Shown here one piece after another: positions 12,070 through 48,700 of a stretch of DNA of 64,000 bases (within the stretch, counting starts at the first letter, position 1; each line of letters starts with the position of its first letter). The notes under the pieces were generated by a model, which was given only the letters and a program-made list of their open reading frames with translations, did not search any database and was not told the DNA's origin. The translations under genes were made by a program, and so were the position numbers. Location of the stretch: positions 230,945 through 294,944 of the IMG/VR virus record IMGVR_UViG_3300045971_000344, one strand, 5' to 3'.

Positions 12070-12087
12070 ACCATATAGGTGTGAACT

Positions 12088-12747: not shown

Positions 12748-12776
12748 TCATTAATAAAGATTTGAGGTAAACCTTT

Positions 12777-26227: not shown

Positions 26228-26238
26228 AGGTTAAAACC

Positions 26239-27246: not shown

Positions 27247-27284
27247 CAAATAACAATTGTCGAATATAAAAGGAGGATGTGGTA

Positions 27285-27518
27285 ATGATTAGTATGCCAA
27301 TACGTTCCGATAGTTCCCGTGAATTGGCCAGTCCATGTATAAACTCTAAAGGTACAGTTTGCCCTAAGAGGGACTACCCAAAGTGTATGAAAGCCTGTCT
27401 TGGATTGTCTAAATTTACTGACTTCCTTATGAATCAAGTAAACTTAATGTCGTCTACAATGAATGATGTTCATCTGTATCCAATAAATTTTAGCAGAAAT
27501 GGAGAATGTGCCCGATGA
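27285..27518 (+). CDS. Small Cys-rich protein
   Basis: SD AGGAGG; SPC...C...CMKAC. Confidence 0.6.
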   Translation: MISMPIRSDSSRELASPCINSKGTVCPKRDYPKCMKACLGLSKFTDFLMNQVNLMSSTMNDVHLYPINFSRNGECAR

Positions 27519-27904: not shown

Positions 27905-27919
27905 AGGACGGAGATAATC

Positions 27920-28657: not shown

Positions 28658-28658
28658 T

Positions 28659-29564: not shown

Positions 29565-29584
29565 AATACTGAGAGTGAATTGAA

Positions 29585-32882: not shown

Positions 32883-32931
32883 GGTCTTCATAATTTATAT
32901 TAAAGGTGGAGTAATATAAAGGAGAATTAAA

Positions 32932-33222
32932 ATGAAGAAAATAGCTATTGGCGGTGGACTAAATACTAAATTAACTCCAAAGCAAATTCAAAAAGTTAAA
33001 GCTAGTGATCCAACCGGTGGTATAGTTAAGTATAGAGACATGGGTAGTCCTGAAGATAAATACGGTATAATTTTAGGCTCTGGTGGTTTCTTAGGACGCG
33101 GCTTGCAGATAATGGTGTACTTAGAAGACGGAAGTACTGTAATAATTGATATTGAAAAATCTCAGGTTATAAAGTATTTAAATAGTAAAAAGGTACGAAC
33201 TATTCTACAAAGATTTTTGTGA
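32932..33222 (+). CDS. Hypothetical protein with leader-like N-terminus
   Basis: SD AAGGAG; MKKIAIGG. Confidence 0.7.
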   Translation: MKKIAIGGGLNTKLTPKQIQKVKASDPTGGIVKYRDMGSPEDKYGIILGSGGFLGRGLQIMVYLEDGSTVIIDIEKSQVIKYLNSKKVRTILQRFL

Positions 33223-33270
33223 AATACCTAATACTAGAGATAATTAAATAACAAGTATGAGGTGAGGACC

Positions 33271-33768
33271 ATGCGTAAGGTCATTATAGCAGGATTCCAG
33301 GGTTACTATGATCCTGATTATGAACCTGGTGCAGTTATGCGCGAGCACGATGCTCGTGAAAAGGTTCGTAAAAAAGAAGAAGAGGCAATTAAGAACATAC
33401 CTTTTCTTGCTAAGAAATTGAAAGGTACCTTAAAGATAACTCCCCCAGTTAGGGGTAGTCTTAATCCAACTATCAAGTTTGTAATAGGGGATTGTAAAAT
33501 AAGTACAAAATATAAAATAAAAGTTAGTACAACCCAACAGTGTCAGCTCATAGTAAACCCTACACCTTCTGAACTTAAGTATGAAGAAATAGCTAGTATC
33601 TGGAAAAGAGTGATGGGTAGAGACTTTTCTAGAATTTATTTTCATACCTACAAGGATAATTACTTTGCAATAGACGTGGGCTATTTACTCAATTTTACTG
33701 ATGATGAGTATAAGAAAAGAACAAAGGTAATACTAGAGATAGTTAAATACTTGAATACCTTGAGGTAG
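33271..33768 (+). CDS. Leader-bearing hypothetical protein
   Basis: MRKVIIAG. Confidence 0.75.
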   Translation: MRKVIIAGFQGYYDPDYEPGAVMREHDAREKVRKKEEEAIKNIPFLAKKLKGTLKITPPVRGSLNPTIKFVIGDCKISTKYKIKVSTTQQCQLIVNPTPSELKYEEIASIWKRVMGRDFSRIYFHTYKDNYFAIDVGYLLNFTDDEYKKRTKVILEIVKYLNTLR

Positions 33769-33774
33769 AAACTT

Positions 33775-34503
33775 ATGAGAAAAATTACGGTACGGTTTAC
33801 CGAGACTAGTGCAGTACCTACTCCTTATGTAGTAAAATTTGTTCCTGCCACTAAAGACGAATACTCAAGTGTAGATGCTCATGTTATAGTTAAGACTACT
33901 GCAACTGGTGGTGTACCTATTACAGCCATAAAGCACTTGTTATGGGAATGTCATTGGCAGTTTTTTAAAAATGGCCCTCATTCAAAGTCATATTCAGGAG
34001 AAAAAGAAGTTATTAATGCTGTTAAGGCCTTGAAGATCACAAACCTGAAGTCCTTAAGTGGAAAGACCTTTGGGAAAACCACAGATGTGATCCAATTGAA
34101 ACTAAATGGATTTCGGATCTATAGTAGCCTACCTGAAAAGGAAGTTCTACACCTTGTAGAACATGCCTTAACAGCCCAGATTAAGGTAACCCAGACTGAA
34201 GAGGATGCGTCTATTAGACGAAAACAAGATGCTCTTAATTACAAGAGCTCTCCTGAAGGTAAAGCAGAAGATGCGGAAATGCGTAGGCTTGCCAATGAAG
34301 GCCGTGCTGAAGATAAGAAAAAGCTTGAAGATAAATGGGGTAAGGACGTAGTTCGAAGAGTGACTTCCAGACAAATAGGCGGTGATGACGGATGTCAGCA
34401 TTCCGTCTTAATTGATGGCCGGGTCTTCGTAAATGGACTAACCAGAAGTGAAGTTGAATACTATAAGGTTCAGGCCTATAAAATTATAATAAAGGGGAAA
34501 TGA
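33775..34503 (+). CDS. Leader-bearing hypothetical protein
   Basis: MRKITVRFTETSA. Confidence 0.8.
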   Translation: MRKITVRFTETSAVPTPYVVKFVPATKDEYSSVDAHVIVKTTATGGVPITAIKHLLWECHWQFFKNGPHSKSYSGEKEVINAVKALKITNLKSLSGKTFGKTTDVIQLKLNGFRIYSSLPEKEVLHLVEHALTAQIKVTQTEEDASIRRKQDALNYKSSPEGKAEDAEMRRLANEGRAEDKKKLEDKWGKDVVRRVTSRQIGGDDGCQHSVLIDGRVFVNGLTRSEVEYYKVQAYKIIIKGK

Positions 34504-34730
34504 TTATGAGTAGCGAACAAATTTTAAATCCGTTGTATGCTAAGCCAAAGGGTGAGGGTAATAAACCAACCAAGCACGTAGCAATGGCCCGTATAGAAAA
34601 CACTAGAGCAGGCGTATGCCCTAAGTGTATGACTGAAATGAGTAAGTCACAGTTAGGTCAGTCAATGGGAAATCAGACCGTCTTTTTCTGCACAACCTGC
34701 AGAGTGGCGGAACCTCTTCCCACGGTATAA
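34500..34730 (+). CDS. Zinc-ribbon protein
   Basis: CPKC...CTTC. Confidence 0.7.
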   Translation: MIMSSEQILNPLYAKPKGEGNKPTKHVAMARIENTRAGVCPKCMTEMSKSQLGQSMGNQTVFFCTTCRVAEPLPTV

Positions 34731-34733
34731 CTC

Positions 34734-35225
34734 ATGGCATTCAAACCGTTGTTTGAAGATTCATCTCTTGAGGTAACTGACACAACTGCTACTACTTGTG
34801 CAGGAATGACGGGTACCTCAACGGGTATGACCGACCCCCAGAAATTGAGAGCGTATAAGCTCTTTAAATACTATGGAATAACTGAACTTCACCATGGAGA
34901 CTGTATTGGTGCTGATGAGCAATGTCATAGGATTGCTGTACGAATGAAAATGAAGATCGTGATTCACCCACCTACGGATGACAAAAAGCGCGCTCATTGT
35001 AAGTTAGGCCATCCTATTATTCTTAAGCCTAAGCCTTACTTGGTACGAAATAAAGATATAGTAGACAGTTCTTATCTTATGTTTGCGTTTCCAAAAGAAG
35101 AAAAAGAACAGCTTCGATCTGGTACGTGGGCAACAATTAGGTATGCTAAGAAACAAAATAAACCTTTGATTATTGTTTTCCCCGATGGAACTGGAAAGAA
35201 GTTTAACTGTAAGAACCTTGACTGA
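34734..35225 (+). CDS. SLOG (DprA/YspA-like) Rossmann-fold protein
   Basis: HHGDCIGAD, YLVRNKDIVD, SGTWATIRYA. Confidence 0.75.
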   Translation: MAFKPLFEDSSLEVTDTTATTCAGMTGTSTGMTDPQKLRAYKLFKYYGITELHHGDCIGADEQCHRIAVRMKMKIVIHPPTDDKKRAHCKLGHPIILKPKPYLVRNKDIVDSSYLMFAFPKEEKEQLRSGTWATIRYAKKQNKPLIIVFPDGTGKKFNCKNLD

Positions 35226-35235
35226 AGGAGCGCTT

Positions 35236-35520
35236 ATGAAGAAATTAGTTGTACGAATTATTGAAACTAGTTCAAAAGTTAAAGATCATATCTATGATAA
35301 GGTCGATAAAACAGCTGAAAAGGATTATGCTAAAAAAGATAGAGCTGAAATAGAAAAATTAACTAAGCAAAAGAATACGGCAAAAGAGACTCTTAGGAAC
35401 GCTAAGAAAAATAAGTCAGCGACAACTAGTTATTATGAAGCCATGGAAAAGAAAATACAAGATTTAGAAACTAAAATAGCTAAAATTCGTGAAAAGGCAG
35501 ACTTACACCGTAATAACTAA
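35236..35520 (+). CDS. Leader-bearing basic coiled-coil protein
   Basis: SD AAGGAG, ATG 35236; MKKLVVRIIETSS. Confidence 0.75.
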   Translation: MKKLVVRIIETSSKVKDHIYDKVDKTAEKDYAKKDRAEIEKLTKQKNTAKETLRNAKKNKSATTSYYEAMEKKIQDLETKIAKIREKADLHRNN

Positions 35521-35539
35521 ACTTAAAGGAGAATTGTAA

Positions 35540-36046
35540 ATGAAGAAGATTACCGTAAGATTTGTATCAAATGCAGCAGCTGCGGAAACAAGCTCTGCAC
35601 GGAGAAAGAACGTAGAGCTGTCCAATGGTGGACCCAAAGGTAAGGCTTTTGATAAATTCTTTGATGCACTTGTCTCTTCACAAGGTAAGGCTTCTACCGT
35701 AGAGGGCGAGATCATTAGGGCAATGGGTAAAGTCGGTTATCGTTGGTACAATGACGGCGATAAATTTTACGAAGGATACGGTGCAGAAACAGCGGGCCCA
35801 TCCGCCTCGTATTTATATGAAAGTCCTGTCCCTGGAATGGCGAAATTAGTGGACGCCGCGGAGCGTGCTAGGGGAGACAGTGCTTATGAAAAGTGTATTC
35901 AAAACATGGTCTCCGCTGTAGTTGAGTACGTAGAGTCCAAGAAGGGTAAATATACCAAAAACAGTATTGATAACTTAGATACAAATAGCAAATGGCGCAA
36001 TGATGACAACGACTATGATGAAGACGATAACGAGTGGGATGACTAA
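35540..36046 (+). CDS. Leader-bearing hypothetical protein
   Basis: MKKITVRFVSNAAAAETSS; GEIIRA...YRWYNDGD; acidic tail. Confidence 0.8.
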   Translation: MKKITVRFVSNAAAAETSSARRKNVELSNGGPKGKAFDKFFDALVSSQGKASTVEGEIIRAMGKVGYRWYNDGDKFYEGYGAETAGPSASYLYESPVPGMAKLVDAAERARGDSAYEKCIQNMVSAVVEYVESKKGKYTKNSIDNLDTNSKWRNDDNDYDEDDNEWDD

Positions 36047-36078
36047 CCTAATATACTAAAAAATAAGGAGAAGCAACA

Positions 36079-36422
36079 ATGAAGAAGATTACTGTAAGAA
36101 TGACAGAAAAAAGCGCAATGATTAAAAAAGGTCTTCAAAAAAAGCAGCAGACTTTGCTGATTCTAATGTTTATAGCGTAGACTGCTGGGATGCTGTTACT
36201 AACAAAGCAATTAGAGAAGACTTGGAAACAAATGGCTCTTTTGAAGACGCAGAAAAAGAAGCTAGTAAGATTTATAAGAATGCAGTGGGCTACGCCGTTA
36301 TTAGGGAAGAAGAAAATACTGGAAAAGAAAGAAAGTACTCAGTTGTTAAGGGTAAGTTCACTAAGATGTCTAGCCTACGCTTACCTTATTTGTGGTTCAA
36401 AGCAGAAGAAGGTGGTAAGTAG
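36079..36422 (+). CDS. Leader-bearing gene that needs a -1 shift at A-AAA-AAG (programmed frameshift or pseudogene)
   Basis: SD AAGGAG; MKKITVRMTEKSA; 0 frame stops at 36180; -1 frame from 36141 is open to 36422. Confidence 0.6.
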
Positions 36423-36543
36423 TACGCTTAAGTCTATTCTTAATAGCGGGAAAAGGCTGACGAGCCCTGACGTAGTGCTTCTACGTATACCGCTACCGAT
36501 TAATTTAAATACTCCTGAGCACAGGAAAGGAAGTGTACAAACG

Positions 36544-38418
36544 ATGATTAAGCGCCGCATGCCTGGAAATAGTCCACTAAGTAGGACACACTCAGTAGAT
36601 AGTACAGCCCTTGGAGCGAAGGCAAACCCAAAGTTAAGAGTTAACGATAGTCAAGGTCGAATGGTTGAGACTTCTAATATTGGAGGGGGCGGACTACAGA
36701 ATACCTCCATGTCTAACAACCCAATATCCATTGACTTATTTCCTTTACTTAAAGGGATAGTACCGGATGGATTTGAAAACTATCCATTACTTAATGCTTT
36801 GTACCGTGATATTTTCTACTATGACTCTGTAGCAGGCTCTGCTACCGAGTTAATGTCGTTTATGCCCTTTTCAGATTTTACCTTGGGCGGAGTAGAATCA
36901 GCTGATAAGCCGAAGCTGAATAAGTTTTATGAATCCTTGGATAGGATTAATACACGCCGTTTATTACCTGAGTTATCCGTAGACTACTTAGTATTAGGTA
37001 CCTTCGTAGGTTCATTGATTTTCAATAAAAAGCAAGGTATCTTTACAGATGTTGTTCCTCAAGACATTGACCACATCTCTATGGTTCCCCTTCCCTTTTA
37101 TTCGCAAGACCCGATAATGAATGTAACGGTAGCAAAAGAAACTATCGCTGCCCTTTCAGGAAATTCTAAGCGCATAGAACGCGTTAAGAAAATGGTAGGC
37201 GAAGAAGTAATACAGAAGTTAACTAGTGGTAAATTTGAGCTCGATCCATTGACCACGCTTTATGTTCCACGCAAGACCCTATCTACTAGAGAAGGAATAT
37301 CTTGGTTTAAACGATTGCTTCCCATATACTTATTGGAGAAAAACCTGTTTAAGGGTACCATTATAGAAAGTGCTAAAAGACAGAGAAGCATAATGCACAT
37401 AATGGCTGGGTCTTCCGATTGGGAGCCAACTGTTAATGACCTACAGTTTCTTACTGAGCTGTTTATGAACGCTGACGCTGACCCTATTGGAGCAATGGTT
37501 GCTACCCGGCAAGACGTTCAGGTAAACGATATTCGCCAAGGTGGTGACTTTTGGAATATTACGCAGGTTTGGGCGGATACAGTACCGGCCAAATTAAGGG
37601 CTCTAGGTATTAGTGAAGGATTCTTAGGACAAGACGCCAACTACGCAGAAGCCCAAAACAGCTTGACTGTCTTTATAGAGTGGCTAGCAGCGTTCCGTTA
37701 TATGATTGAGCGCAAAGTATTTTACGATAAAATATTCCCGTTTATTAGTGTAGTAAACGGTTATTATAAAACAGAAAAAGACATGAAGAAATGGAAGAAC
37801 AGCGATCTAGATCCCGAAGATATTATGTACGAGCTTCAGGATAATAGCGCCCTCATGATTCCAAAAATTCATTGGCACAAACAGCTACAACCCGAAGGTG
37901 ACTCTGATTATTTGGGTATGTTAAATAGCTTGGCCGAGGCAGGCGTACCTGTTACCTTACGTTCACTTGCCGCAGCTGGTAACTTGAGCTTGGATCAGTT
38001 AATGTCTGAAATGGAAGAAGACCTGCGGTTGAGGAAGACGGTCCAAGAAATGAAGGCAAAATTAGAAGGCGGAGGAGGGGGCGGTGATGAAGGTGGATCT
38101 GGAGAAGAGTCTTTTGAAGAATCTTCTATAGGTGCAAATTTTAGTACCTTGGGTTCCCTTAGCCCGGACAATCCTTATATAAGTGCTGCCTTATCCAAGA
38201 CTAGGGCAAAGCACGGACCTCTTAAGAATATACTTCAGCGTTCCTATGGTTCCGATAGTGAGATCAAAGGTGTATCCAAGACAGGAAAAATGAAGTACGT
38301 CCATAATCAAAAAGAAGCTAATGACCGAATCAATACCTTCATCGCTCGCGCGGCCGTAGAAAAACATGGAGTAAAGAAAAATAGAAGAACATTCTTCCCT
38401 ACAATAAAATTAAGATAG
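36544..38418 (+). CDS. Probable portal protein
   Basis: 624 aa from ATG 36544 (purine-rich SD); helical core with LYRDIFYYDSVAGSATEL and KLRALGISEGFL; lies between terminase and protease. Confidence 0.65.
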   Translation: MIKRRMPGNSPLSRTHSVDSTALGAKANPKLRVNDSQGRMVETSNIGGGGLQNTSMSNNPISIDLFPLLKGIVPDGFENYPLLNALYRDIFYYDSVAGSATELMSFMPFSDFTLGGVESADKPKLNKFYESLDRINTRRLLPELSVDYLVLGTFVGSLIFNKKQGIFTDVVPQDIDHISMVPLPFYSQDPIMNVTVAKETIAALSGNSKRIERVKKMVGEEVIQKLTSGKFELDPLTTLYVPRKTLSTREGISWFKRLLPIYLLEKNLFKGTIIESAKRQRSIMHIMAGSSDWEPTVNDLQFLTELFMNADADPIGAMVATRQDVQVNDIRQGGDFWNITQVWADTVPAKLRALGISEGFLGQDANYAEAQNSLTVFIEWLAAFRYMIERKVFYDKIFPFISVVNGYYKTEKDMKKWKNSDLDPEDIMYELQDNSALMIPKIHWHKQLQPEGDSDYLGMLNSLAEAGVPVTLRSLAAAGNLSLDQLMSEMEEDLRLRKTVQEMKAKLEGGGGGGDEGGSGEESFEESSIGANFSTLGSLSPDNPYISAALSKTRAKHGPLKNILQRSYGSDSEIKGVSKTGKMKYVHNQKEANDRINTFIARAAVEKHGVKKNRRTFFPTIKLR

Positions 38419-38429
38419 AGGTAAAAATC

Positions 38430-38696
38430 ATGAGAAAAATTATTGTACGTTTCACTGAGACTGGTTCACTCAAAGAACAATCTTTTGCTACTCGTCCTAA
38501 ATTTTTAGAACGAGGGCAATCCGTAAACATAGTTGATCGACATGGAAAAGGAATGACTTGTGATGTATTACTTCGTGCTAGTACAGACGATGATGGGAAT
38601 TTACTTATGACAGTTACTCCAACTTCTCGTAAAGGTCCTTCCTTTTTGGTTGTATGGAATAGTCGTGAAGGTAAATGGATAGAGTTTGAGGACTAA
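38430..38696 (+). CDS. Leader-bearing hypothetical protein
   Basis: MRKIIVRFTETGS. Confidence 0.75.
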   Translation: MRKIIVRFTETGSLKEQSFATRPKFLERGQSVNIVDRHGKGMTCDVLLRASTDDDGNLLMTVTPTSRKGPSFLVVWNSREGKWIEFED

Positions 38697-38699
38697 CGT

Positions 38700-39065
38700 A
38701 TGAGAAGAACAACTATAAAGACCTCAAAACCTGAAGTTGTTATCTTTAAGACCATACCAGATGAGTATAAAGGTTTACGAGTGGAGGACCGTTGTCCCTC
38801 TAATAGTGAGCTGTCTTCATGGATTAAATGGAGAAATAAAGAACAAAAGAAATTCTCTGAACCTTGGATTATGGTAGACGTTAGAAAGGCATTGATAAAG
38901 ACAAACATTTCTGGTAGAGGAAATGGTAGTAATCCTTGGTGGTGCGTAGGGGCTCAGGTTACTTTAAAAGGTGGAGCATCTCTTTTATTTTGGAAAGCAT
39001 TAGACAAAGTAAAGCTTTTAGATAAAGGGTTTCATCCCTATATTCTTATAGCTATAAAAGGATGA
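38700..39065 (+). CDS. Leader-bearing hypothetical protein
   Basis: MRRTTIKTSK. Confidence 0.7.
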   Translation: MRRTTIKTSKPEVVIFKTIPDEYKGLRVEDRCPSNSELSSWIKWRNKEQKKFSEPWIMVDVRKALIKTNISGRGNGSNPWWCVGAQVTLKGGASLLFWKALDKVKLLDKGFHPYILIAIKG

Positions 39066-39072
39066 GTAATTT

Positions 39073-39360
39073 ATGAGAAAAGTAATTATCGCAGGTATAG
39101 TACGCGCATCTCAGCAAATAACTCTTAAGGGAAACCGCTTAGTATTTCCTTCCGGTGAAGTTTCAAGTTTGCCAACTAAATATGATGAATTTTTAGTTGT
39201 GGGTAATAAACGTGGTGAGGAAGTAGCAATACAAAAACAGAAGAAGTATATTTACTTGGACTTTAATAAGTATGATGAGACTGTACCCGATGAAAAATCT
39301 CTAGTTGAATATTTAAATAAAAATGGTTATATTTATTTCATTGGTGTTGATGATAGATAA
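39073..39360 (+). CDS. Leader-bearing hypothetical protein
   Basis: MRKVIIAG. Confidence 0.75.
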   Translation: MRKVIIAGIVRASQQITLKGNRLVFPSGEVSSLPTKYDEFLVVGNKRGEEVAIQKQKKYIYLDFNKYDETVPDEKSLVEYLNKNGYIYFIGVDDR

Positions 39361-39380
39361 ATTGAGGACTGGAGAATTTT

Positions 39381-39767
39381 ATGAGAAAAGTCGTAATTGC
39401 GTCTACAGGAGAAAAAGTTACCTCCAAAGAGAGAAGGACCATAACAGACGGATTATACAAAGTTTCAAAGGTGAAATGGGAAAGCATTCCCTTAAGAGAA
39501 ATAAGACAGGCCTTTGCAGACGCGAATATGATCTTACTCCAAGAGGATGATACTCCATATAGCGGAATGTTCTTGGGTGAAAAAGGCAGGGCAAGAATAG
39601 CTTTTGGTCGTGCACCTGAAGAAATCTGTGAGCGCTCAGTGTACGGTAAGCTAACAACGGACCAGTCTAATACACGCTTTACCCCAATCAGTAATAGCCT
39701 GCTCATCCTTGAGTGGTATAAAGATCAGGGTATGACAAAGTCCGAAATTAATTGTTATATATCCTGA
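39381..39767 (+). CDS. Leader-bearing hypothetical protein
   Basis: MRKVVIAS. Confidence 0.75.
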   Translation: MRKVVIASTGEKVTSKERRTITDGLYKVSKVKWESIPLREIRQAFADANMILLQEDDTPYSGMFLGEKGRARIAFGRAPEEICERSVYGKLTTDQSNTRFTPISNSLLILEWYKDQGMTKSEINCYIS

Positions 39768-39778
39768 GGTAGACCATT

Positions 39779-40180
39779 ATGAGATTCGTAGCGATAGCTA
39801 AAGATTTGTATAACACAAAAGACGTTTTAGCTATTCAAAATAAAGATAGACAGAAAAAACTTTCTTTAAGAACAATTTTTGACTTAGACGAGTCTAAGGC
39901 ATTGTTAGAAAGTAAGTGGGATCTTGTGGACATTCCTTTAGTTAAGATTAAAAAGGGTGTTTTTAGCTTTAACCCAGATTTTGAAATGCTTAGAGTTGGG
40001 TCTGTAGCGTACAAAGCAAATAAGAATGTTTACGACATAATTCTTGCATATAAAGCAAGGGCCAACGTCCCTCCTTTGTGGCTAGATTCGGATCTTAGCG
40101 TTCTAGATGGAAACCACCGAATGGCTGCTCTAGAGTTTTTAGGTATAAAGAAAATAAAAGCTTTTATTCCTGCATCATGA
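39779..40180 (+). CDS. Leader-bearing ParB/Srx-like domain protein
   Basis: MRFVAIAK; VPPLWL....VLDGNHRMAAL..LG. Confidence 0.75.
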   Translation: MRFVAIAKDLYNTKDVLAIQNKDRQKKLSLRTIFDLDESKALLESKWDLVDIPLVKIKKGVFSFNPDFEMLRVGSVAYKANKNVYDIILAYKARANVPPLWLDSDLSVLDGNHRMAALEFLGIKKIKAFIPAS

Positions 40181-40189
40181 GGTTGTTCT

Positions 40190-40666
40190 ATGAGATTCGT
40201 AATTATTGCTGGTGAAGAAGACCACAAGGCAGCGCTTGAACGTACCGGCTTTTGGGGACAAGAAGCCGCTGGTTGCTTATTTTTGGCAAAAGACACTGGA
40301 CGTATTCTGTTTGCCCGAAGAAGCAAGAATGTATTGAGCCCAAATACTTATGGAACATGGGGTGGGGCTATAGACAGAGGAGAATCTCCAGAGAAGGCAG
40401 TTCGTAGAGAAGTAGAAGAAGAATCTGGATACGCTGGAACATTCGCTCTAAAGTTTCTTATACTGTTCAAACATTCATCTGGCTTTCAGTATTTTAACTA
40501 CCTTGCTATAGTTCCCACTGAGTTTGAACCCGAATTGGATTGGGAAACTTCTGGGTATAAGTGGGTAACTTTTGGGCAATGGCCACGACCTTTACACTCT
40601 GGGGTTAAATTTCTTTTGGCAAATGCTTCAAATAAAATAAAGAAATACGTAGATAAATACTCTTAG
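40190..40666 (+). CDS. Leader-bearing Nudix hydrolase
   Basis: MRFVIIAG; Nudix box GGAIDRGESPEKAVRREVEEESG. Confidence 0.9.
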   Translation: MRFVIIAGEEDHKAALERTGFWGQEAAGCLFLAKDTGRILFARRSKNVLSPNTYGTWGGAIDRGESPEKAVRREVEEESGYAGTFALKFLILFKHSSGFQYFNYLAIVPTEFEPELDWETSGYKWVTFGQWPRPLHSGVKFLLANASNKIKKYVDKYS

Positions 40667-40691
40667 TAGGACCCTGAGGAGGGAACGGGTT

Positions 40692-40928
40692 ATGACTAGT
40701 GCGGTTGAGTCTAGTGAGATTTTAGTATGTGACCGTTGTGGTTCAGACGAAGGTAAATGTAGTCATGCGTTAGACACAAAGGATTATCTCTTACAAAGAC
40801 GAGAGACTTATATCGTCCAGAAGAAAAAAGCGCTCAATCTTTTAGCCTTCTTTTTGATCTTAATATTAGCTACCGTAATATATTTAGTTGGGTATTACAA
40901 TTTATTTGGTTATACCAGGTTAAAATAA
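40692..40928 (+). CDS. Small membrane protein
   Basis: CDRC motif and C-terminal TM helix. Confidence 0.6.
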   Translation: MTSAVESSEILVCDRCGSDEGKCSHALDTKDYLLQRRETYIVQKKKALNLLAFFLILILATVIYLVGYYNLFGYTRLK

Positions 40929-40962
40929 ATTCTGATTTAACCTAGGATGAGGAGATTGTTCC

Positions 40963-42306
40963 ATGTTAATGTCTGAATTTATTTCTAAGTACAAAAAAGC
41001 AGGGCGTAAGAAAAGTTCTGCGCTTGAACTTATAAAGACAAAGACACGTTTGGTTGGTGAACGTTGGACAAATAAAAAGCAATTGCTGTTTGATAAAACG
41101 TGGGACGCTTTAGATAACGTTAGCCCTATTATAGTAGAGCATAAACCCGAGAAAAGGGATGAATTAGATCCTTTTGAAGAACGCTTTAAACTCATGGCAA
41201 AAGTGTTTAACAAAAGAGAGGCCTTAAAATTTTACCATGACCTTTGGGTTTATTATAATCACAAGCTATTCTCTAATAGGATGAAGGCTCCTGGATTTAA
41301 ATTTACTAGGGATAGTGGTCTTAAGTTGAACGTACGGGCATACTATTCCTCTAAAAATATAATAGCATTTAACAAAAGATTATTCTTCAACCCTTTCAGT
41401 ATGTTTTGTAACACCATGGTGCATGAAATGTGTCACCAAGCGGTGGCCGTATTGGATGGCAAGGTTAATATAAGAGAAGGTAAGAACAGGGTTATTCATG
41501 GAGACGACTGGAAGAAATGGATGCGTCACTGTGGACTAAACCCAGACCGCTGTACTAAGTCTGAATTAATGGATTACATGAATGAAGATGAAAAGGTTGA
41601 ACATAAAGAAAAGATAGAAGAGAGAAAAGCTCAAGTAGCATCTAAGGTTAAGTTACAGCCTGAGGGTCATACTATTGCTCAGACATGGTCTACTCAAAGG
41701 CATGAATGGATAAAAGGCTGGATTGTAATGCCTTTAGATAAAGGTAGAAAGAAATGGATGTTTATTGAAAAGCCCGAAGGGTTGGCTTACCTTATTGTAC
41801 CTGCAGAATCGTTTTTTGAGGTTCCTCTGGAGGAACAGAGAGCACTTGAGCTTAATACTATTCAGTGGAAACAGTATTCTAAGCATATAGAACAACAGTA
41901 TATCTCTGTTAAGTCCCGAAAGAAAGAACAAAACGCAGGTAAGAAACAATTTACCACTAATTACGCTAAATTATTACAAGAGCACTATAAGTTAATTCCA
42001 GGATCTAGGTTACAGAGCTTTGAGGTAATATTATACTTATTAGCTAGGTCTGAAATTGCAAGTAATGGGTATGGAACTTATAATATAACGCGCTTAAGCG
42101 CAGGTAGTAAATATCCTGTGTATATGGTTACAGATGCAGTAAATTGGTTGTGCCTTATGGATCCTCATAATGTGGAGACCGATGACACTGAAGAATTAGT
42201 TACCTTCATGAACAATTCCGGCTATGGTCAAAAAGGCTATACCATAGAGAATTTTTTATCTGCGGTAAGGAATTATTACTATAACGGTGAAGACGTATTT
42301 GCGTAG
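40963..42306 (+). CDS. SprT-like zinc metalloprotease
   Basis: YYNHKLF, TMVHEMCHQ, HGDDWKKWM. Confidence 0.8.
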   Translation: MLMSEFISKYKKAGRKKSSALELIKTKTRLVGERWTNKKQLLFDKTWDALDNVSPIIVEHKPEKRDELDPFEERFKLMAKVFNKREALKFYHDLWVYYNHKLFSNRMKAPGFKFTRDSGLKLNVRAYYSSKNIIAFNKRLFFNPFSMFCNTMVHEMCHQAVAVLDGKVNIREGKNRVIHGDDWKKWMRHCGLNPDRCTKSELMDYMNEDEKVEHKEKIEERKAQVASKVKLQPEGHTIAQTWSTQRHEWIKGWIVMPLDKGRKKWMFIEKPEGLAYLIVPAESFFEVPLEEQRALELNTIQWKQYSKHIEQQYISVKSRKKEQNAGKKQFTTNYAKLLQEHYKLIPGSRLQSFEVILYLLARSEIASNGYGTYNITRLSAGSKYPVYMVTDAVNWLCLMDPHNVETDDTEELVTFMNNSGYGQKGYTIENFLSAVRNYYYNGEDVFA

Positions 42307-42324
42307 TTAAAAAGGAGAATTATA

Positions 42325-42588
42325 ATGAAGAGAAGAAATTTTGAGATTTCATTGGATATTGATGATAGTAATAAAGCATTTAAGACCATCTTTTATCCTA
42401 AGTCTATCTATAAAGGTAAGTATGATAAGGGCTTTGATACTTTAAGTGCAGCCCGCCTTTGGATTATTAGAGTACTGGGTCAGAAGATAGACTTAGAATA
42501 CGGGGAATTGTATAAAGGCCAAGATAAGATAAAAGAATACACAAAGAACATTGACGGTAAGGTCTGTGAATTAATACCTGTTAAATAA
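42325..42588 (+). CDS. Hypothetical protein with leader-like N-terminus
   Basis: SD AAGGAG; MKRRNFEISL; C-term GKVCELIPVK. Confidence 0.7.
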   Translation: MKRRNFEISLDIDDSNKAFKTIFYPKSIYKGKYDKGFDTLSAARLWIIRVLGQKIDLEYGELYKGQDKIKEYTKNIDGKVCELIPVK

Positions 42589-42597
42589 GGATAATCT

Positions 42598-43335
42598 ATG
42601 AAGATAAAAAGGGTAGGTATTTCCATACGCGAAGTAAGTCTGTATACTGAGACTTCAAGCTCAGACTTTAAAGACCTATCAGAGAAGGACCAGTTAAAGG
42701 AATTGAAGGTTAGCTCACCTCAAAAAGCACTGTCTTTATTTAAGACACTTAAGGCTCCTACGGACAAACAAATACAGATCGTACTTAAGAAGAACCCAAA
42801 GGTCTTGAAACACATAAAACCCCTGCCCAAGTATGTTGAATACGTCTTAGACGAAGACCCTTCTGCGCTAAATCTAATTCCTAAATCTAAGGTAACCGAT
42901 GACTTACTAATAAAGGCAATACGCCCTACCAAAAAAGTATTAGCTGGCCCTAAAGATATTGTGGCTCGAGAGACCTTGAAGAACGTAAGTAAGATAGATA
43001 AGGGAATAAAATTCAGCCCTCGGGCAATAAAAGAAATTAAAAAATTGATTAAAGGTATAAGTAATAGTGAAGTAAAAAGAGCAAATTCCTTACTATCTAA
43101 ACGAGGTATCACGGAGATAGAAATGTCTGCGAGTTCAATTGTTAGATCTAAGTATCCGCCTTATACTTTAACCGTTGCCTTTCCCGGGAATGAAGACACG
43201 AGGTATGAATACTATATAGGCTCTTGGCCGTTATTTAATAAAGCACTCTCCTTACAGAACAATCCTGGAGAGTTTAGCGCCTTTGTAAAACAACATGAAC
43301 TTGATTGTAAAAAATTTACGGTGGGTGTGTCATGA
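42598..43335 (+). CDS. Leader-bearing protein; C-terminal domain possibly KTSC-like
   Basis: MKIKRVGISIR..TETSS; internal IEMSAS then TLTVAF...YEY...F.......PGEF..FVK. Confidence 0.65.
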   Translation: MKIKRVGISIREVSLYTETSSSDFKDLSEKDQLKELKVSSPQKALSLFKTLKAPTDKQIQIVLKKNPKVLKHIKPLPKYVEYVLDEDPSALNLIPKSKVTDDLLIKAIRPTKKVLAGPKDIVARETLKNVSKIDKGIKFSPRAIKEIKKLIKGISNSEVKRANSLLSKRGITEIEMSASSIVRSKYPPYTLTVAFPGNEDTRYEYYIGSWPLFNKALSLQNNPGEFSAFVKQHELDCKKFTVGVS

Positions 43336-44444
43336 AATTATCTGAATTAGTAGTCCGATGGAAGACAAAGGGCATGACGCATCCTGAAGCTTTGTCTAAA
43401 GCAAAGGATAAGGTTAGAAAATTTGGTGAACGCTGGACAAAGAATAAGCAAGCGATCTTTGATACCTCTTGGAGTGAGGTTACTGAAAGTAAGCCCTCTA
43501 AGCAGCCTAGGTCGAGCATAAAGCCCACCACGGACGGTAAAATATCCAATATAGATGAAACAAAGACGCAAGGTGGTACTTATCCACAACGGATTAAGTT
43601 CTTTAATACTATACTTGCTCCATGTAAATTCCCAAAGTCAGATTGGTCTAAATTTGGGCTCCATGTTAGGGCGACTAATACAACTGAGCCCTCTAAAGAG
43701 CAGGCTTTGGCCTTAAAGCTCCTTAAACAGCACGGGTTTACTTACGCTCACAATATAAAGCCCAAGGTATTTCAAGAAGCTAGAGAGACACGAACAGTTG
43801 CCTGGTATAATGACCGTTATAACAACAGTATAAGCACAGTAGCCCAAAAGTCTAATAACGGTAAAGATGATTTCTTTATCCTTAATCTATCGTACCACAT
43901 GACACTCGCTGAAAAAGAAGCCCTTCAAGGTATGGAATGGCTAGAAGAAAAGAAGAAGGCGGCACAAGAGAAAATTGCAAATGGTGAGTTAAAACAGCAG
44001 AAGCGAAAAGAAGATTATCAGTTATCGTTCCATGATTACCTTAAGAACGCTAAGGGTACCCAGACAATACGAGTTGGCGTAAAGGAATTTGGACCCGAAG
44101 AATTAAAAGAACAATGGATAAACAAGGTAGAAGAGGCTATAAAGGATGGTCGTCAGGTACCTCAAGCTGTAAAGAGCGAGTACAACGTAATGACCAAAGC
44201 TGTTGGGTCCGTCTATAAGTTACCTGTACTTAATGGTAAAGATAAGACCGTAACTTTAGATGAAGAAAAATTGAATAAAATAATTCGTAATTTAAAGAAG
44301 AAGGGCGTTGTTGTAGTAAAATCAGATGATAAGACTGCTTTTACCTTATCTACTGAACAACTAATATCTTCAGTTCCCTGTGGACCAGCCTTACGGTCCG
44401 CACTTAAACTAAAGAAACTGTGGGCAATGAAAGGGAGATTGTAA
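43332..44444 (+). CDS. Hypothetical protein sharing an N-terminal module with the SprT-like protein
   Basis: KVRKFGERWTKNKQAIFDTSW vs KTRLVGERWTNKKQLLFDKTW. Confidence 0.7.
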   Translation: MKLSELVVRWKTKGMTHPEALSKAKDKVRKFGERWTKNKQAIFDTSWSEVTESKPSKQPRSSIKPTTDGKISNIDETKTQGGTYPQRIKFFNTILAPCKFPKSDWSKFGLHVRATNTTEPSKEQALALKLLKQHGFTYAHNIKPKVFQEARETRTVAWYNDRYNNSISTVAQKSNNGKDDFFILNLSYHMTLAEKEALQGMEWLEEKKKAAQEKIANGELKQQKRKEDYQLSFHDYLKNAKGTQTIRVGVKEFGPEELKEQWINKVEEAIKDGRQVPQAVKSEYNVMTKAVGSVYKLPVLNGKDKTVTLDEEKLNKIIRNLKKKGVVVVKSDDKTAFTLSTEQLISSVPCGPALRSALKLKKLWAMKGRL

Positions 44445-45187
44445 TGGATAACATTGGTCTGTATCATAAAGGACGCCAGGTTGTTTACGCGTCTGCACAC
44501 CGCTCTATGGCTCCCATAGACGCTCATAAAGAAAAGCTATCGGCTAACACTGCAATAGCTTCATCTATAACAGGTGAAAATGGCCACAGGCTGGATGCCG
44601 ACGCTTGGTTATCTGCTGCGTCTAAACACTATTGTCTATCCAGAGATATAAAGGACTACGTTATTGTTCCGGTACCAGCCATTATGTCGGATATACCTAA
44701 TACTAATGGGGTGGCGATGCCTCGTTCTGAGTTGTTAGAATTCAGACCTGATGAAGGTCGCCCTGCATACAAAACATGGAAGGGAAAACCCACTTTTAGA
44801 GAACATGATAACCAAGATATCGCCCGGGCAAAGGGTTTGATTTTGGATTGTTATGTTAGCCCTGTCCGTAACTATGGTAAAGGTTTGATTAAGGTTATGA
44901 TGCTAGCGGCCTACGATAGAACAAAAGACAGTGTACTGGCTAACAATATCCTTAACGGTAGTGAGAACGCATATAGTATGGGCGCATACTTCTCTGGGTA
45001 TAAGTGTTCGATCTGTGGTTCTGGTCGATGTAACCACACAGGTCCAAAAGAGGCCTTGAAGATTGACCCTGTATCCAAAACATTAGCCTATAGAAATATT
45101 TATGAGATCAGTGGCTTTGAGCTAAGTTCGGTTTCTTCGCCGGCCTACATAGTTGCCGTAAGTGACTATTTGCTCGGAGCACAGTAA
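44444..45187 (+). CDS. Prohead (capsid maturation) protease, HK97/herpes-like fold
   Basis: PNTNG, TWKGKPTFREH (His), YSMGA (Ser), CSICG, FELSSVSSPAY. Confidence 0.8.
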   Translation: MDNIGLYHKGRQVVYASAHRSMAPIDAHKEKLSANTAIASSITGENGHRLDADAWLSAASKHYCLSRDIKDYVIVPVPAIMSDIPNTNGVAMPRSELLEFRPDEGRPAYKTWKGKPTFREHDNQDIARAKGLILDCYVSPVRNYGKGLIKVMMLAAYDRTKDSVLANNILNGSENAYSMGAYFSGYKCSICGSGRCNHTGPKEALKIDPVSKTLAYRNIYEISGFELSSVSSPAYIVAVSDYLLGAQ

Positions 45188-45727: not shown

Positions 45728-48700
45728 ATGTTAGGATCAGCAGCAGGTTTAAGCTCGAAGTTTAAAAAACAATTTGGACATGGAATTGAAGTCTCAGCGC
45801 CCAGACAAAAGGGTGTAGCTCCGGACAAAGTGTTTGAAAGTAAGATGCATGAAAAAACACTTGAAGTACCTTTATCAGAAGGTGGCCAGCCCAAGCGCGA
45901 ATTCTTGGACTGTTTGTATCGTGCTTTCTCTCCAGAAGAAAAACAGAAGGTAACTAAGAAGACCGAAGAACTTAAGATCGAGGTTTCTAAAGATTTCGGT
46001 TGGGATGTTCTTTTCCGTAAGATCAACGAAATCCAAAATACAGTTGAGGCAATAAAAGTCAGACACTTTGCTTTGTTGGCTATTATGTCCGATTTAGCTA
46101 CAGGTCAGATTTGGAACTGTTACGATGCTGAGGAAGACTATAATGCCTTTAAGGCAGGTACAGCAACAGTACCTCAAGTAGTAAATTTGATTGTTACTAT
46201 AACAGGTACTAGTAGATCTTATCGTTACCCCGAAGCTACTTCTAAAGAAGGCTTTATTGCAAAGACCGTTGGTAAAGAATTTGATGAGTACATGATTGCC
46301 ATGAATAAATTTATGGCATCAGACTCTACCTTTATTCTAAAACGTAGTGGCTCTGATATTGATCTAGAGTGGGTTGGTGATGGTAGGGCCAATGAGTCAC
46401 CTGTACCTAGTTATAACTATCCTGATCCTAAAAAGATTATTTCAAAAGAAGACTTTTCAGAACTGGTAGTTAAAAGAGAACTTGCAGGAAATTCTGGAGC
46501 TATAATTACAGCCCTTTACTCTGAGGTTTACGAGTCAGTATTTAACTTTCTTTCTTCCGTAGTTCCTGGGTTGAATACTAATCTCCATACAAAACAGTTT
46601 ACTCAGCATAAATTGGATTTTATGCTTGATCTGACTGTTAGTCGGACATTTAGAGAATACCTTATTAGGGAGTGGGACGTAATTAACCTCCCCAAAGGTT
46701 TTCAGGAAGCGCGTGGAAAGTATTTATCCCTCCTTATACACAGGGGCTACAATAAAAATTATATCCCTCTGGAGCGGGCAAAGAACGCGCAGAGATCAGC
46801 ATTCGATCTTTATGACAAAGTACGGTGTACACTTAGTGTCCCCGTTAATGTAGACGGTTCTACGCAACTTGAAGAACGTGAAGTTATTGCTACCATGAGA
46901 ACCTGGAGTAGAAATAAAAAGAAGCTTAGTGTTGATTACCAAGGTAATGAATACAAAATTACTGAAGTAAAGGACTTACGACTCTTCCTTAAAGAGGGCC
47001 TTGAGAACTTGACTAGACCAGACGTTGCTATACTTAACGCGATAAATCTCTCTCTTCATTTTACCTTTAAGATAAAAATGAATGAGCAATTTACTAGAGT
47101 GGTTACTCAGACAGTAAGCGGAAAAGTTGGGTTCTCTGCAATGCGGACATGGATTATGATTTGGCAGAAACTTAAGTTCACTCGCTCTAGAGAGTTTAAG
47201 CGCACACCTAAGTATATTCTACCTTATAGCACCTTGGCGTCCAATCCTGCGTTTAAATCAAAAAGTTCGGTACCTGCGGAACGTACAGATGAAAATGGTA
47301 TGACCGTAGATAATGTGGGAAGAATAATTTATGTCCCGCCTATTTCCGACACTCTTCCTTTAGAGTACGAAAAGACGTTGGATGAACTCTTGGAAAGTTC
47401 TTACGCTAACAATGAGCCCTTCAATATTGAGAATACAACTAGTGCACCTATTTATAAGTTAACTCGCTCTACAGAAGAGCAAGAAGCTAGGGTAGAGGGT
47501 ATAGAGAAACTTACAAGATTTAACCTGCTTCCCTTAGCAGTTAACTGGACTACCAACGTTGTTCTTTACCCAGGTAATTCTAATAAGAACAAAGTTGAGG
47601 CAGTTAACCTTGATGGGGCGATGAAACCAGATGTTAGGACAATGGCAGACTGGATGGGTATGCCTACAAGGGGAGGAGAAGAAGGTGGACCCGGGGGTAA
47701 ATTCCCTGGTGGAAAGCCAGGTATGCTGGCTTACAGTCAAATGACCGGAGTGTCTAAAATAACCGAGCCTGCAGAGCTTATTACTGCATTGTTTTTTGTT
47801 GAAGTTTTCTATGATTGGTTATTAACAAATAAAAAGGTAGCGGATTATGATACTATTTTACAAAGAGCAAAAAAGCATTTAGAGGGAATTGAGCGCGGAC
47901 CAGAAATTACTGAGATTGATACTCCTGAAATCTATAAACGTATAATAACCGATGATAAATTTATAACAGCTGGTTTATCCTCTTATGATAATACTGGTAA
48001 TGCAGGGTCGATGCTAAAAGCTGCAATGTGGGCCGCAAACCCTCATAATCCTAAGTTTCAGGCTGTTTGTAAGTCCTATACTGTTGCTACAACAGACCAT
48101 CCTTGTTATTTTAAATTAGATGAATCTACTTTATCTAAAATTCATGAAAGCCTAAGTCTTTTACTTGGTGGTGCTCTTTGGATTGAGTTGTGTAAAGAGT
48201 GTAATGAATTTCTTAAGGACCAGAAAGCCTTAGAAGACTTGATCTTGAATGGTGTTGAAATTGACCACATGGATATGTTGAATTACGATACACTATCTAC
48301 TAAGATAGTTCCTCAGATAAAGATTTGGGGCGTCTATATGCCTCAATCTGATGATATTTTACTGAAGGCGCATGAGCATAAAAAGACTTTGGAGAAAACT
48401 AAGGACTATGTACCTGAGGTTCCTGGTATTAAAGAAATAGACCCAACTGATCCAAAACAGGAGGGGTTTGCTCTACAACCACATCAGGTAGACGTAATGG
48501 CATATTCGGCGTCACACCCTAGATTTATGATCCTCGATGTTGCCCCTGGTGGTGGAAAGACGACTCTTGGGCTATCAGAGATCTTAACGTATTTAGGTGA
48601 GGGTCGGATTAAGCGTCCTATGGTAATGATGCCTGCGAAGCTCATTAAGAACTGGATTAACGATTGCATCCATGTTCTTAAAGCACCAGTTAACTTCATA

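What the first reader, a model, noticed from the sequence alone, without database searches (positions are those of the whole stretch)
44444..45187. Inferred prohead-protease site [VIT]-x-[TI]-[AS]|[SAG], also at internal domain boundaries
Seen: most leaders end in this pentamer (VAIAS, VEISS, VTTAA, VRISS, ITIAS, IEISS, VIIAG, TETSA, IETSS). It recurs in the protease's own N-terminus (TAIASS), the portal N-terminus (MVETSN), after the TopoIB domain (VETSS), before the WW module in 4007 (TEISS), and in 10754 (VETSAS), 27515 (VETSM), 42598 (IEMSAS) and the SNF2 N-terminus (IEVSA). Known: herpes assemblin, which shares the fold, cuts after Ala before Ser, whereas T4 and phiKZ proteases cut after Glu. 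Inference: this protease cuts after a small residue, removes the leaders and splits packaged polyproteins into separate domains.
Basis: partly seen in the sequence, partly recalled or inferred. Interest (0 to 1): 0.75.

Follow-up and report, generated by a model that had tools for sequence, protein, structure and literature searches.

The report
Phage head protease cleavage motif
A giant phage's head-maturation protease probably cuts after a small residue (Ala or Ser) at the end of a 7-20-residue N-terminal tag carried by about one in nine of its proteins, so the tag may be a removable label for loading enzymes into the capsid. The cut is inferred from sequence, not shown.

Summary
The window is the last 64 kb of a 295-kb uncultured jumbo phage. 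ORF 44444-45187 is its head-maturation protease: PHROG hit at E 6e-73, and a model that matches T4 gp21 at Z 12.2 and herpes assemblins at Z 5.6-6.5.

At N-termini the motif is far above chance: 19 against 1.4 expected in the window, 43 against 12 genome-wide. About 46 of about 404 ORFs start with Met, a basic residue and an aliphatic beta-strand, ending h-x-[I/T/V/L]-[A/S].

Small-residue sites of the same kind are conserved in otherwise variable N-termini of the usual protease substrates: portal, major capsid protein, the protease itself, the SNF2 protein and others. They are over-represented in an acidic scaffold-like protein here and in phage PaBG.

Away from N-termini the motif is only weakly enriched. 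The sites after TopoIB and in ORF 42598 are not conserved. The site before the "WW" module in ORF 4007 is supported by a parallel case in a relative.

Cleavage, the exact bond and packaging remain inferences; no relative has a mapped cleavage site. I call this a new variant of the T4 and phiKZ propeptide systems, with an assemblin-like preference at P1. Confidence is about 0.6.

The parts
44444..45187 (+). Head-maturation (prohead) protease, 247 aa from the ATG at 44444. A GTG at 44420 would add 8 codons.
   Evidence: phrog_18299 at E 6.2e-73. Model pLDDT 83. T4 gp21 5JBL at Z 12.2; VZV and HCMV assemblins at Z 6.5 and 5.6. No Pfam hit.
44801..44809 (+). E120-H121-D122; H121 is the presumed catalytic His
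   Evidence: E120 and H121 are invariant in 45 homologues.
44969..44986 (+). AYSMGA; S178 is the presumed catalytic Ser
   Evidence: S178 and G180 are invariant.
45113..45130 (+). GFELSS; E226 is a candidate third triad residue. It matches the motif by chance but lies in the conserved fold core.
   Evidence: E226 and S228 are invariant. Listed as a false positive.
44543..44566 (+). ANTAIA|SS, candidate N-terminal self-cleavage site of the protease
   Evidence: [IL]-[AS]-S is kept in all 11 homologues of 54% identity or more and in many distant ones, 11-12 residues before the RLD..WL motif.
45146..45160 (+). VAVS|D in the C-terminal tail, candidate C-terminal self-cleavage site
   Evidence: A-[IVTL]-S-D occurs in 22 of 45 homologues. 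Model confidence collapses from residue 234.
36544..38418 (+). Portal protein, 624 aa (corrected start)
   Evidence: phrog_16240 at E 2.7e-178. The N-terminal extension is conserved in relatives.
36655..36681 (+). GRMVETS|NI, conserved island in the variable portal N-terminus
   Evidence: A comparable island occurs in 58 of 69 portals, against 2.8 in shuffles; the pattern was chosen post hoc.
45779..45808 (+). HGIEVS|APRQ near the N-terminus of the 2035-aa SNF2 protein (45728-51835)
   Evidence: E-x-[SA]-A-[RP] is kept in 4 of 4 relatives. The PaBG homologue gp202 is a virion protein.
475..12809 (+). First cluster of leader-bearing ORFs. Leaders start at 475, 1836, 2306, 2870, 3467, 4007, 6649, 7366, 8250, 8467, 10031, 10390, 11740 and 12777, each 7-16 codons long.
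   Evidence: Each has a Shine-Dalgarno site upstream, and codons vary, including both Ser codon boxes.
24590..42657 (+). Second cluster of leader-bearing ORFs. Leaders start at 24590, 27515, 27920, 28659, 32932, 33271, 33775, 35236, 35540, 38430, 39073, 39381, 39779, 40190 and 42598.
2306..2332 (+). Typical short leader MKTISVEIS|S
33775..33810 (+). Typical ETS-type leader MRKITVRFTETS|A
40190..40210 (+). Minimal leader MRFVIIA|G on a NUDIX hydrolase
   Evidence: PF00293 at E 4.2e-14, domain residues 25-131.
8467..9783 (+). Leader, WW module, TopoIB domain and a C-terminal domain in one protein
   Evidence: PF01028 at E 8.6e-27, residues 134-338. The leader and WW module are kept in homologues P0353, P0354, P0379 and P0488.
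9487..9510 (+). PDVETS|SD after the TopoIB domain: weak candidate site
   Evidence: It lies in a variable linker and is not conserved in 3 homologues of the same architecture. The protein does hold 5 motif hits against 1.0 expected.
4460..4504 (+). DYTEIS|SDSGDAWW, internal site directly before a WW module in ORF 4007
   Evidence: The same junction occurs at leader ends (2870, 3467) and internally in L001 ORF 1276, as SETS|ADAWW.
11447..11473 (+). DMVETS|ASA near the C-terminus of ORF 10706
   Evidence: It aligns with a small-residue cluster, EAVAAG, in PaBG gp197 at 23% overall identity.
10856..10885 (+). VRVSVIA|TSD, candidate propeptide end in ORF 10706
   Evidence: It aligns with GTITA|SA of PaBG gp197.
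43108..43134 (+). ITEIEMS|AS in ORF 42598: weak candidate site
   Evidence: It sits at the junction to a C-terminal domain that L001 lacks. The motif is not conserved in L008.

Best explanation
ORF 44444-45187 encodes the prohead protease of a 295-kb jumbo phage. It is a serine protease of the T4 gp21 / herpes assemblin fold, with presumed catalytic residues H121 and S178 and probably E226.

About 46 phage proteins, 29 of them in this window, are made with a short N-terminal leader. The leader is Met, a basic residue and an aliphatic beta-strand (M-[RK]-x-[IV]-x-[VI]-x-[IF]), and it ends in h-x-[I/T/V/L]-[A/S].

Proposed mechanism:
1. The N-terminal part of the leader acts as a capsid-targeting tag during prohead assembly, as the T4 capsid targeting sequence (CTS) does.
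2. The protease then cuts after the small residue (P1 = Ala or Ser; P2 beta-branched or aliphatic; P4 Val or Ile; P1' usually small but tolerant).
3. The same specificity would trim the portal (after residue 44), the major capsid protein (candidate sites after residues 35 and 59), the protease's own N- and possibly C-terminus, and the N-terminus of the giant SNF2 protein. It would also cut an acidic scaffold-like protein several times.
4. The matured cargo (ADP-ribosyltransferase, TopoIB, NUDIX, SNF2 and many unknowns) would stay in the head and enter the host with the DNA.

Shown here: the protease family and fold, the existence, extent and protein-level conservation of the leaders, and the conservation of small-residue sites in orthologues.

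Inferred: cleavage itself, the bond cut, and packaging.
For: Protease identity.

Leaders:
- 19 hits against 1.4 expected in the window, and 43 against 12.4 +/- 3.4 genome-wide.
- 43 of 46 curated leaders hold the site. P4 is V24/I15, P2 is I23/T8/V7/L5, P1 is A23/S18/G2. The median length is 9 residues.
- Each has a ribosome-binding site upstream. Synonymous codons vary, with Ser encoded by both AGY and TCN, so selection acts on the peptide.
- The downstream domains are unrelated to each other.

Portability:
- Acb1 orthologues in L004 and L007 carry a leader (...IA|K...LA|K) that our own Acb1 lacks. Our Acb1 aligns from exactly the predicted mature end.
- Orthologous metallophosphatases carry either this leader or another N-terminal module.

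Conserved sites in the usual protease substrates:
- Portal island in 58 of 69 homologues.
- MCP sites 1 and 2, plus a third, leader-like SA[LI][AS]SS site in a subgroup.
- Protease N-terminus.
- SNF2 N-terminus, 4 of 4 relatives.
- gp81-, gp82- and gp197-like proteins compared with PaBG.
- Glu is not conserved at these sites, whereas small residues are.

Scaffold-like acidic protein: 6 hits against 1.3 expected here, and 9 against 2.7 in PaBG gp82.

PaBG virion data: the MCP loses about 20% of its mass, several proteins run in multiple bands, and the SNF2 homologue gp202 is in the virion.

Precedents: the T4 CTS and gp21 self-cleavage, and SPN3US portal, MCP and auto-cleavage.
Against: - There are no proteomic or N-terminal sequence data for this phage or for any relative with mapped sites.
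- The whole MCP N-terminal region is conserved, so conservation alone does not pick out the bond.
- P1' is Lys, Ile or Pro in some candidates.
- Internal enrichment is marginal, and two cited internal sites are not conserved.
- Cultured relatives (PaBG, Vibrio phage GR7B) have the portal and protease islands but few or no MRKIxVxI leaders. Leader removal therefore cannot be read across from them.
Confidence: 0.6

Rival explanations
1. The leaders are targeting or assembly tags that are never removed. The small-residue end is only a strand terminator or flexible hinge between the tag and the cargo domain.
For: No cleavage is shown. P1' is variable. The complex prediction gave no answer, which is not evidence either way.
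Against: The same small-residue pattern recurs in portal, MCP and protease N-termini, where proteolysis has precedent. PaBG virion proteins are processed. Internal copies precede WW modules where no N-terminal tag exists.
Confidence: 0.17
2. The leaders are cleaved, but with a different rule or by a different enzyme. Possibilities are a bond one residue away, a cut after the Glu of the ETS-type sites, the SprT-like metalloprotease (40963-42306), or a host leader peptidase comparable to the staphylococcal Prp that trims phage 80-alpha capsid and scaffold leaders (the Prp case is from my own knowledge).
For: Eleven of 43 leaders have Glu at P3. A conserved SprT-like protease lies 2 kb upstream. 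The register of the portal and SNF2 islands is ambiguous by one residue.
Against: Most leaders, and the MCP and protease sites, have no Glu. In the minimal leaders the IA pair is fixed while the next residue varies among S, G, K and A, which puts P1 at Ala. SprT proteases are not known as sequence-specific maturases (general knowledge).
Confidence: 0.15
3. The shared N-termini are leftovers of duplication or recombination of gene 5' ends (promoter, ribosome-binding site and start cassettes), with no function of their own.
For: Many leader genes lie in tandem arrays, and some are paralogues, such as ORFs 2870, 3467 and 4007.
Against: Codons differ widely while the residues are kept. Downstream domains are unrelated. 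The same leader type is kept in relatives whose proteases are only 54-75% identical. Orthologues gain or lose it cleanly.
Confidence: 0.05

Closest known systems
T4 gp21 prohead protease with the capsid targeting sequences (CTS) of IPI-III, Alt and gp24
   Same: Same protease fold (Z 12.2). In T4, N-terminal propeptides of 10-20 residues direct proteins into the prohead core and are removed by the protease. An ADP-ribosyltransferase is among the cargo. The T4 protease activates by N-terminal self-cleavage.
   Different: T4 cuts after Glu in [L/I]-x-E (general knowledge; LPE), whereas here P1 appears to be Ala or Ser. About 46 tagged proteins here against fewer than ten in T4. The leader sequence is unrelated. 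There is no Pfam S77 match. This protease has a Cys/His knuckle insert.
phiKZ gp175, 201phi2-1 and SPN3US gp245 giant-phage prohead proteases
   Same: Jumbo phages in which MCP, portal, many internal head proteins and the protease itself are processed at one short motif.
   Different: Their motif is A/S/G-x-E with the cut after Glu, and most of their propeptides are 111-254 residues long. Here the leaders are 7-20 residues long and end in a small residue.
Herpesvirus assemblin (MEROPS S21)
   Same: Related fold: VZV at Z 6.5, HCMV at Z 5.6, KSHV at Z 3.5. Assemblin cuts Ala|Ser in (V/L/I)-x-A|S (general knowledge), the same P1 and P1' preference as inferred here.
   Different: The hydrophobic residue is at P3 in assemblin but at P2 and P4 here. 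Assemblin's substrates are itself and the scaffold. The sequences are not detectably similar.
Polyvalent proteins of phages and conjugative elements (Iyer et al. 2017, PMC5512222)
   Same: Same effector repertoire delivered with the DNA: ART-PolyVal, SNF2 ATPase and peptidases. Many TopoIB homologues sit in proteins of 800-4668 aa.
   Different: Here most effectors are separate small ORFs, each with its own leader. Only a few look like fusions that might be split (ORFs 4007 and 8467, and the SNF2 protein).

Membership tests
T4 gp21-like prohead protease (MEROPS S77 / Pfam PF03420) | gp21 fold | tested here: met
   Foldseek against 5JBL gives E 6e-5, probability 1.00. VIA-align gives Z 12.2 with 149 residues aligned at rmsd 2.8 A.
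T4 gp21-like prohead protease (MEROPS S77 / Pfam PF03420) | Match to the family's sequence profile | tested here: not met
   No Pfam family at E <= 0.01. No PDB sequence or profile hit to gp21. It does belong to phrog_18299, 'head maturation protease'.
T4 gp21-like prohead protease (MEROPS S77 / Pfam PF03420) | His-Ser-acid catalytic triad | tested here: inconclusive
   H121, S178, E226 and D158 are invariant in 45 homologues. No residue-level superposition on gp21 was available.
T4 gp21-like prohead protease (MEROPS S77 / Pfam PF03420) | Cleavage after Glu | not testable with these tools
   The sequence evidence points to small residues rather than Glu at the conserved sites.
Herpesvirus assemblin (MEROPS S21) | Assemblin fold | tested here: met
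   VZV 1VZV at Z 6.5 and HCMV 8J3S at Z 5.6. These are ranks 2 and 3 of 48,161 chains, with only gp21 above them. The Z values alone are modest.
Herpesvirus assemblin (MEROPS S21) | Ser-His-His triad and Ala|Ser cleavage | not testable with these tools
   The motif is compatible with a cut between Ala or Ser and a small residue. The triad was not mapped.
T4-type capsid targeting sequence (CTS) | Short N-terminal peptide that ends at a prohead-protease site | tested here: met
   Leaders are 6-20 residues long and 43 of 46 end in the motif. This holds by sequence pattern only.
T4-type capsid targeting sequence (CTS) | Sufficient to load a protein into proheads, and removed there | not testable with these tools
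   Needs an experiment. Indirect support: the PaBG virion contains the SNF2 homologue.
Polyvalent / virion-delivered effector proteins | Characteristic effector domains next to head genes | tested here: met
   ART-PolyVal PF18760 at E 1.9e-25 on a leader-bearing ORF, SNF2 and TopoIB. These genes lie among the portal, terminase and protease genes.

The most novel reading that the evidence does not exclude
A portable N-terminal tag of 7-12 residues loads about 11% of a jumbo phage's proteome into the prohead. The cargo includes an ADP-ribosyltransferase, a type IB topoisomerase, a NUDIX hydrolase and a 2035-aa SNF2 protein. The tag is then removed by a gp21-fold protease whose P1 preference is Ala or Ser, as in herpesvirus assemblin, and not Glu as in T4 and phiKZ. 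That would suggest small-residue specificity is old in this protease superfamily. It would also give a minimal, transplantable capsid-loading tag.
Probability: 0.35. Interest if true: 0.8.

Novelty: new variant of a known kind. Interest (0 to 1): 0.6.

Why it matters
- Only a few prohead-protease specificities are known, essentially Glu for T4 and the phiKZ group. The specificity decides which head proteins mature.
- Recent work shows that CBASS sensors carry bait loops tuned to a phage protease's specificity (PMC12991175). A clade with Ala/Ser preference would predict different baits.
- It would also link phage and herpesvirus proteases by function as well as by fold.
- A leader of 7-12 residues marking about 46 cargo proteins would list the injected proteome of an uncultured jumbo phage from sequence alone.
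- Such a leader could serve as a small tag for packaging foreign proteins, as the T4 CTS has.

Tried and rejected
- Complex prediction of the protease with a 30-residue leader peptide gave 'no answer' (score 0.02). This is not evidence either way.
- DNA search of the phage collection found nothing near the window. There was no PDB sequence or profile link from the protease to gp21.
- The TopoIB protein has no close relative in viral contigs. The records behind L001, L004 and L007 cannot be searched further.
- Literature searches found no mapped cleavage site for the PaBG / Lu11 / Y3 / Yoloswag group or for this leader family. The phage G capsid paper is not held. Its PDB chain 6WKK starts at about our MCP residue 70, which is only a hint.
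- Rejected: a leader on the DNA polymerase. MKTITFDI is part of a conserved polymerase N-terminus and has no site.
- Rejected: GFELSS in the protease as a cleavage site, because it is in the invariant fold core.
- Rejected: a DNA-level repeat as the cause of the leader similarity.
Full report
CONTEXT. The window is the last 64 kb of a single 294,944-bp virus record with 39% G+C, rated complete. It encodes a portal (36544-38418, phrog_16240 at E 2.7e-178), a large terminase (29585-31708), a head-tail connector (5212-6411), a family A DNA polymerase, a 2035-aa SNF2 protein and many small ORFs. The major capsid protein (MCP) lies outside the window at genome 189836-190930 on the minus strand. It is 46.6% identical to PaBG gp80 and hits phrog_2522 at E 4.8e-85. 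No cultured phage is close. The best protease matches are PaBG at 44.5%, then Erwinia, Dickeya, Xanthomonas and Vibrio jumbo phages and 204 mycobacteriophages. Metagenomic relatives reach 54-75% protease identity. Five of their contigs were read as loci L001, L003, L004, L007 and L008.

THE PROTEASE. ORF 44444-45187 (247 aa) matches phrog_18299, 'head maturation protease', at E 6.2e-73, but matches no Pfam family. A model built on 45 homologues (pLDDT 83, pTM 0.82) matches T4 gp21 first: Foldseek E 6e-5, and VIA-align Z 12.2 over 149 residues. Varicella-zoster (Z 6.5) and cytomegalovirus (Z 5.6) assemblins follow as the next two of 48,161 chains. H121, S178 (in YSMGA), E226 and D158 are invariant. 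Membership of S77 by sequence profile does not.

THE OBSERVATION.
- The pentamer occurs 19 times in the first 25 residues of 78 window ORFs, against 1.4 expected.
- Genome-wide it occurs 43 times in the first 45 residues, against 12.4 +/- 3.4 in shuffles.
- Internal matches are only slightly above chance: 18 against about 13 in the window, and 89 against 72 +/- 8 genome-wide (6 of 200 shuffles reach 89).
- The Glu-containing subtype does better internally: 14 against 6.6 +/- 2.5.
- The portal instance is internal (residues 40-44), because the 39 codons upstream are conserved in relatives.

THE LEADER FAMILY. About 46 of about 404 ORFs, 29 of them in the window, start with Met, Arg or Lys and an alternating aliphatic strand, then end in h-x-[I/T/V/L]-[A/S].
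- Counts for the first such site in each of 43 leaders: P4 is V24/I15, P2 is I23/T8/V7/L5, P1 is A23/S18/G2, and P1' is S14/A7/G5/K5/I5. The median length is 9 residues.
- Each leader has a Shine-Dalgarno site upstream. Codons vary freely, with Arg as AGA, CGT, CGA or AGG and Ser from both codon boxes, so it is the peptide that is conserved.
- Downstream domains are unrelated: TopoIB, NUDIX, DUF4116 repeats, an ART-PolyVal ADP-ribosyltransferase (genome 137232-138236) and many unknowns.
- Relatives carry the same kind of leader.
- Orthologues can have it or lack it. Acb1 in L004 and L007 begins with a leader ending IA|K or LA|K. The Acb1 of this genome begins at exactly the corresponding Lys.

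COMPARATIVE EVIDENCE FOR A PROTEASE SITE.
1. Portal. In an otherwise hypervariable N-terminal extension there is a small-residue island 15-22 residues before the conserved body. Examples are GRMVETS|N here, GRMIETS|S, RLSETA|A, WTSES|AG, FESLS|AM, and FEATA|G in PaBG. A pattern of this kind occurs in 58 of 69 portals against 2.8 +/- 1.5 in shuffles, but the pattern was chosen after seeing the data. Glu is not conserved there; the small residues are.
2. Protease. [IL]-[AS]-S sits 11-12 residues before the first conserved motif in all homologues of 54% identity or more and in many distant ones. T4 gp21 activates by N-terminal self-cleavage.
3. MCP. There are two small-residue sites: EAAIA|S at residues 31-36 and VTAS|S at 56-60 (LALS|S and AYAS|G in PaBG). 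A subgroup has a third, leader-like site, SA[LI][AS]|SS, in a variable linker. PaBG's MCP loses about 20% of its mass, which fits a cut near residues 60-77. Because the whole region is conserved, the bond cannot be picked from conservation.
4. SNF2 N-terminus. E-x-[SA]-A-[RP] is kept in 4 of 4 relatives. The PaBG homologue gp202 (E 2.6e-92) is virion band 1.
5. PaBG alignments. The gp81-, gp82- and gp197-like proteins keep sites aligned with PaBG at 23-38% identity.
6. Scaffold-like protein. The acidic protein next to the MCP gene holds 6 motif hits against 1.3 expected. Its PaBG orthologue holds 9 against 2.7. Multiple cuts are what one expects of a scaffold protein.

INTERNAL 'POLYPROTEIN' SITES.
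- Best supported is TEIS|S in ORF 4007. It sits 5 residues before a WW/HPxSKYAK module, the same junction found at the leader ends of ORFs 2870 and 3467. An unrelated L001 protein has SETS|A two residues before its internal WW module.
- The two ORF 10706 sites align with small-residue clusters in PaBG gp197.
- VETSS after the TopoIB domain lies 18 residues past the catalytic Tyr in a variable linker. It is absent from three homologues that keep the leader, the WW module and the C-terminal domain.
- IEMSAS in ORF 42598 is at a domain junction but is not conserved.

MECHANISM. The most likely reading is a T4-like scheme. The N-terminal strand targets cargo to the assembling prohead. The gp21-fold protease self-activates. 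It then cuts after Ala or Ser, trims the portal, MCP and SNF2 protein, fragments the scaffold-like protein and removes the leaders. The cargo is ejected with the DNA, as T4 Alt and polyvalent proteins are.
- The portal, MCP and protease sites lack the Met, basic residue and strand. That part of the leader is therefore more likely the address than the protease recognition element.
- Estimated odds: the leaders are a real functional signal, about 0.95; they are removed by this protease at or next to the motif, about 0.6; the bond is exactly [A/S]|x, about 0.4-0.45.

RIVALS.
- Tags that are never removed (0.17).
- Cleavage by another rule or another enzyme: one residue off, after Glu, the nearby SprT-like protease, or a host peptidase (0.15).
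- Leftover duplicated 5' gene ends (0.05). Codon divergence and clean gain and loss among orthologues contradict this one.

COMPARISON AND NOVELTY. The system works like the T4 gp21/CTS system and like the phiKZ/SPN3US propeptide systems. It differs in the inferred P1 (small rather than Glu), in leader length (7-20 residues against mostly 111-254 in SPN3US) and in scale. The P1 and P1' preference resembles herpes assemblin, which shares the fold, although the hydrophobic positions differ. I found no paper that maps a cleavage site for this protease clade or describes these leaders. I rate it a new variant of a known kind. It rests on sequence statistics and comparison only.

Noticed in passing
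window 45005-45037 (protease residues 188-198): A nearly invariant C-x2-C...C-x-H cluster sits after the catalytic Ser strand. It looks like a zinc knuckle inserted into the gp21 fold, and it gives weak C2H2 zinc-finger hits in a PDB profile search.
   Followed up: partly
window 40963-41100 and 43332-43470; window 1-468; genome 224819-225394: A second shared N-terminal module of about 45 residues (MKLS..V..WK.KG...KAK..V.K.G.RWT..KQ..FD..W) heads the SprT-like protein, ORF 43332 and two others. In relatives it heads a metallophosphatase whose orthologues elsewhere carry the short leader instead, so the two modules may be interchangeable.
   Followed up: partly
window 2915-2990, 3505-3580, 4490-4565, 8530-8610, 12880-12950: A 'WW' module (WW..SKEQKAAYIKAHPNSKYAK, core HPxSK[YF]AK) occurs on five proteins, always 2-25 residues after a motif copy. 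It is also found in TopoIB homologues P0353, P0354, P0379 and P0488. No Pfam family matches it.
   Followed up: partly
genome 137232-138236 (-) and 132052-134298 (-), outside the window: A leader-bearing ART-PolyVal ADP-ribosyltransferase (PF18760 at E 1.9e-25), analogous to packaged T4 Alt. A PARP-domain protein without a leader lies nearby.
   Followed up: partly
L004:2834-3343, L007:613-1119; genome 142639-143133 (-): Anti-CBASS Acb1 homologues in two relatives carry a leader-like N-terminal extension, which suggests they are packaged. The Acb1 of this genome lacks it.
   Followed up: yes
genome 191777-193618 (-), outside the window: A 613-aa protein next to the MCP gene has an extremely acidic Asp/Glu-rich middle. 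Its N-terminus resembles a leader (…GVVTVA|GS), and the motif is over-represented in it. It may be the scaffold. The annotations of its relatives ('ATPase', 'ribosomal-like') look spurious.
   Followed up: partly
L008:18-3296; L007:1600-5106; P0235, P0239, P0320, P0324: Inteins or homing endonucleases interrupt the portal and large terminase genes of several relatives, but not those of this genome.
   Followed up: no
window 36661 (Met40 of the portal): The public gene call for the portal (585 aa, P0233) starts at the internal Met of MVETS. The conserved upstream extension shows the true start is 36544.
   Followed up: yes
P0356-P0502: Many close TopoIB homologues are C-terminal domains of proteins 800-4668 aa long. 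These are probably polyvalent virion proteins.
   Followed up: no
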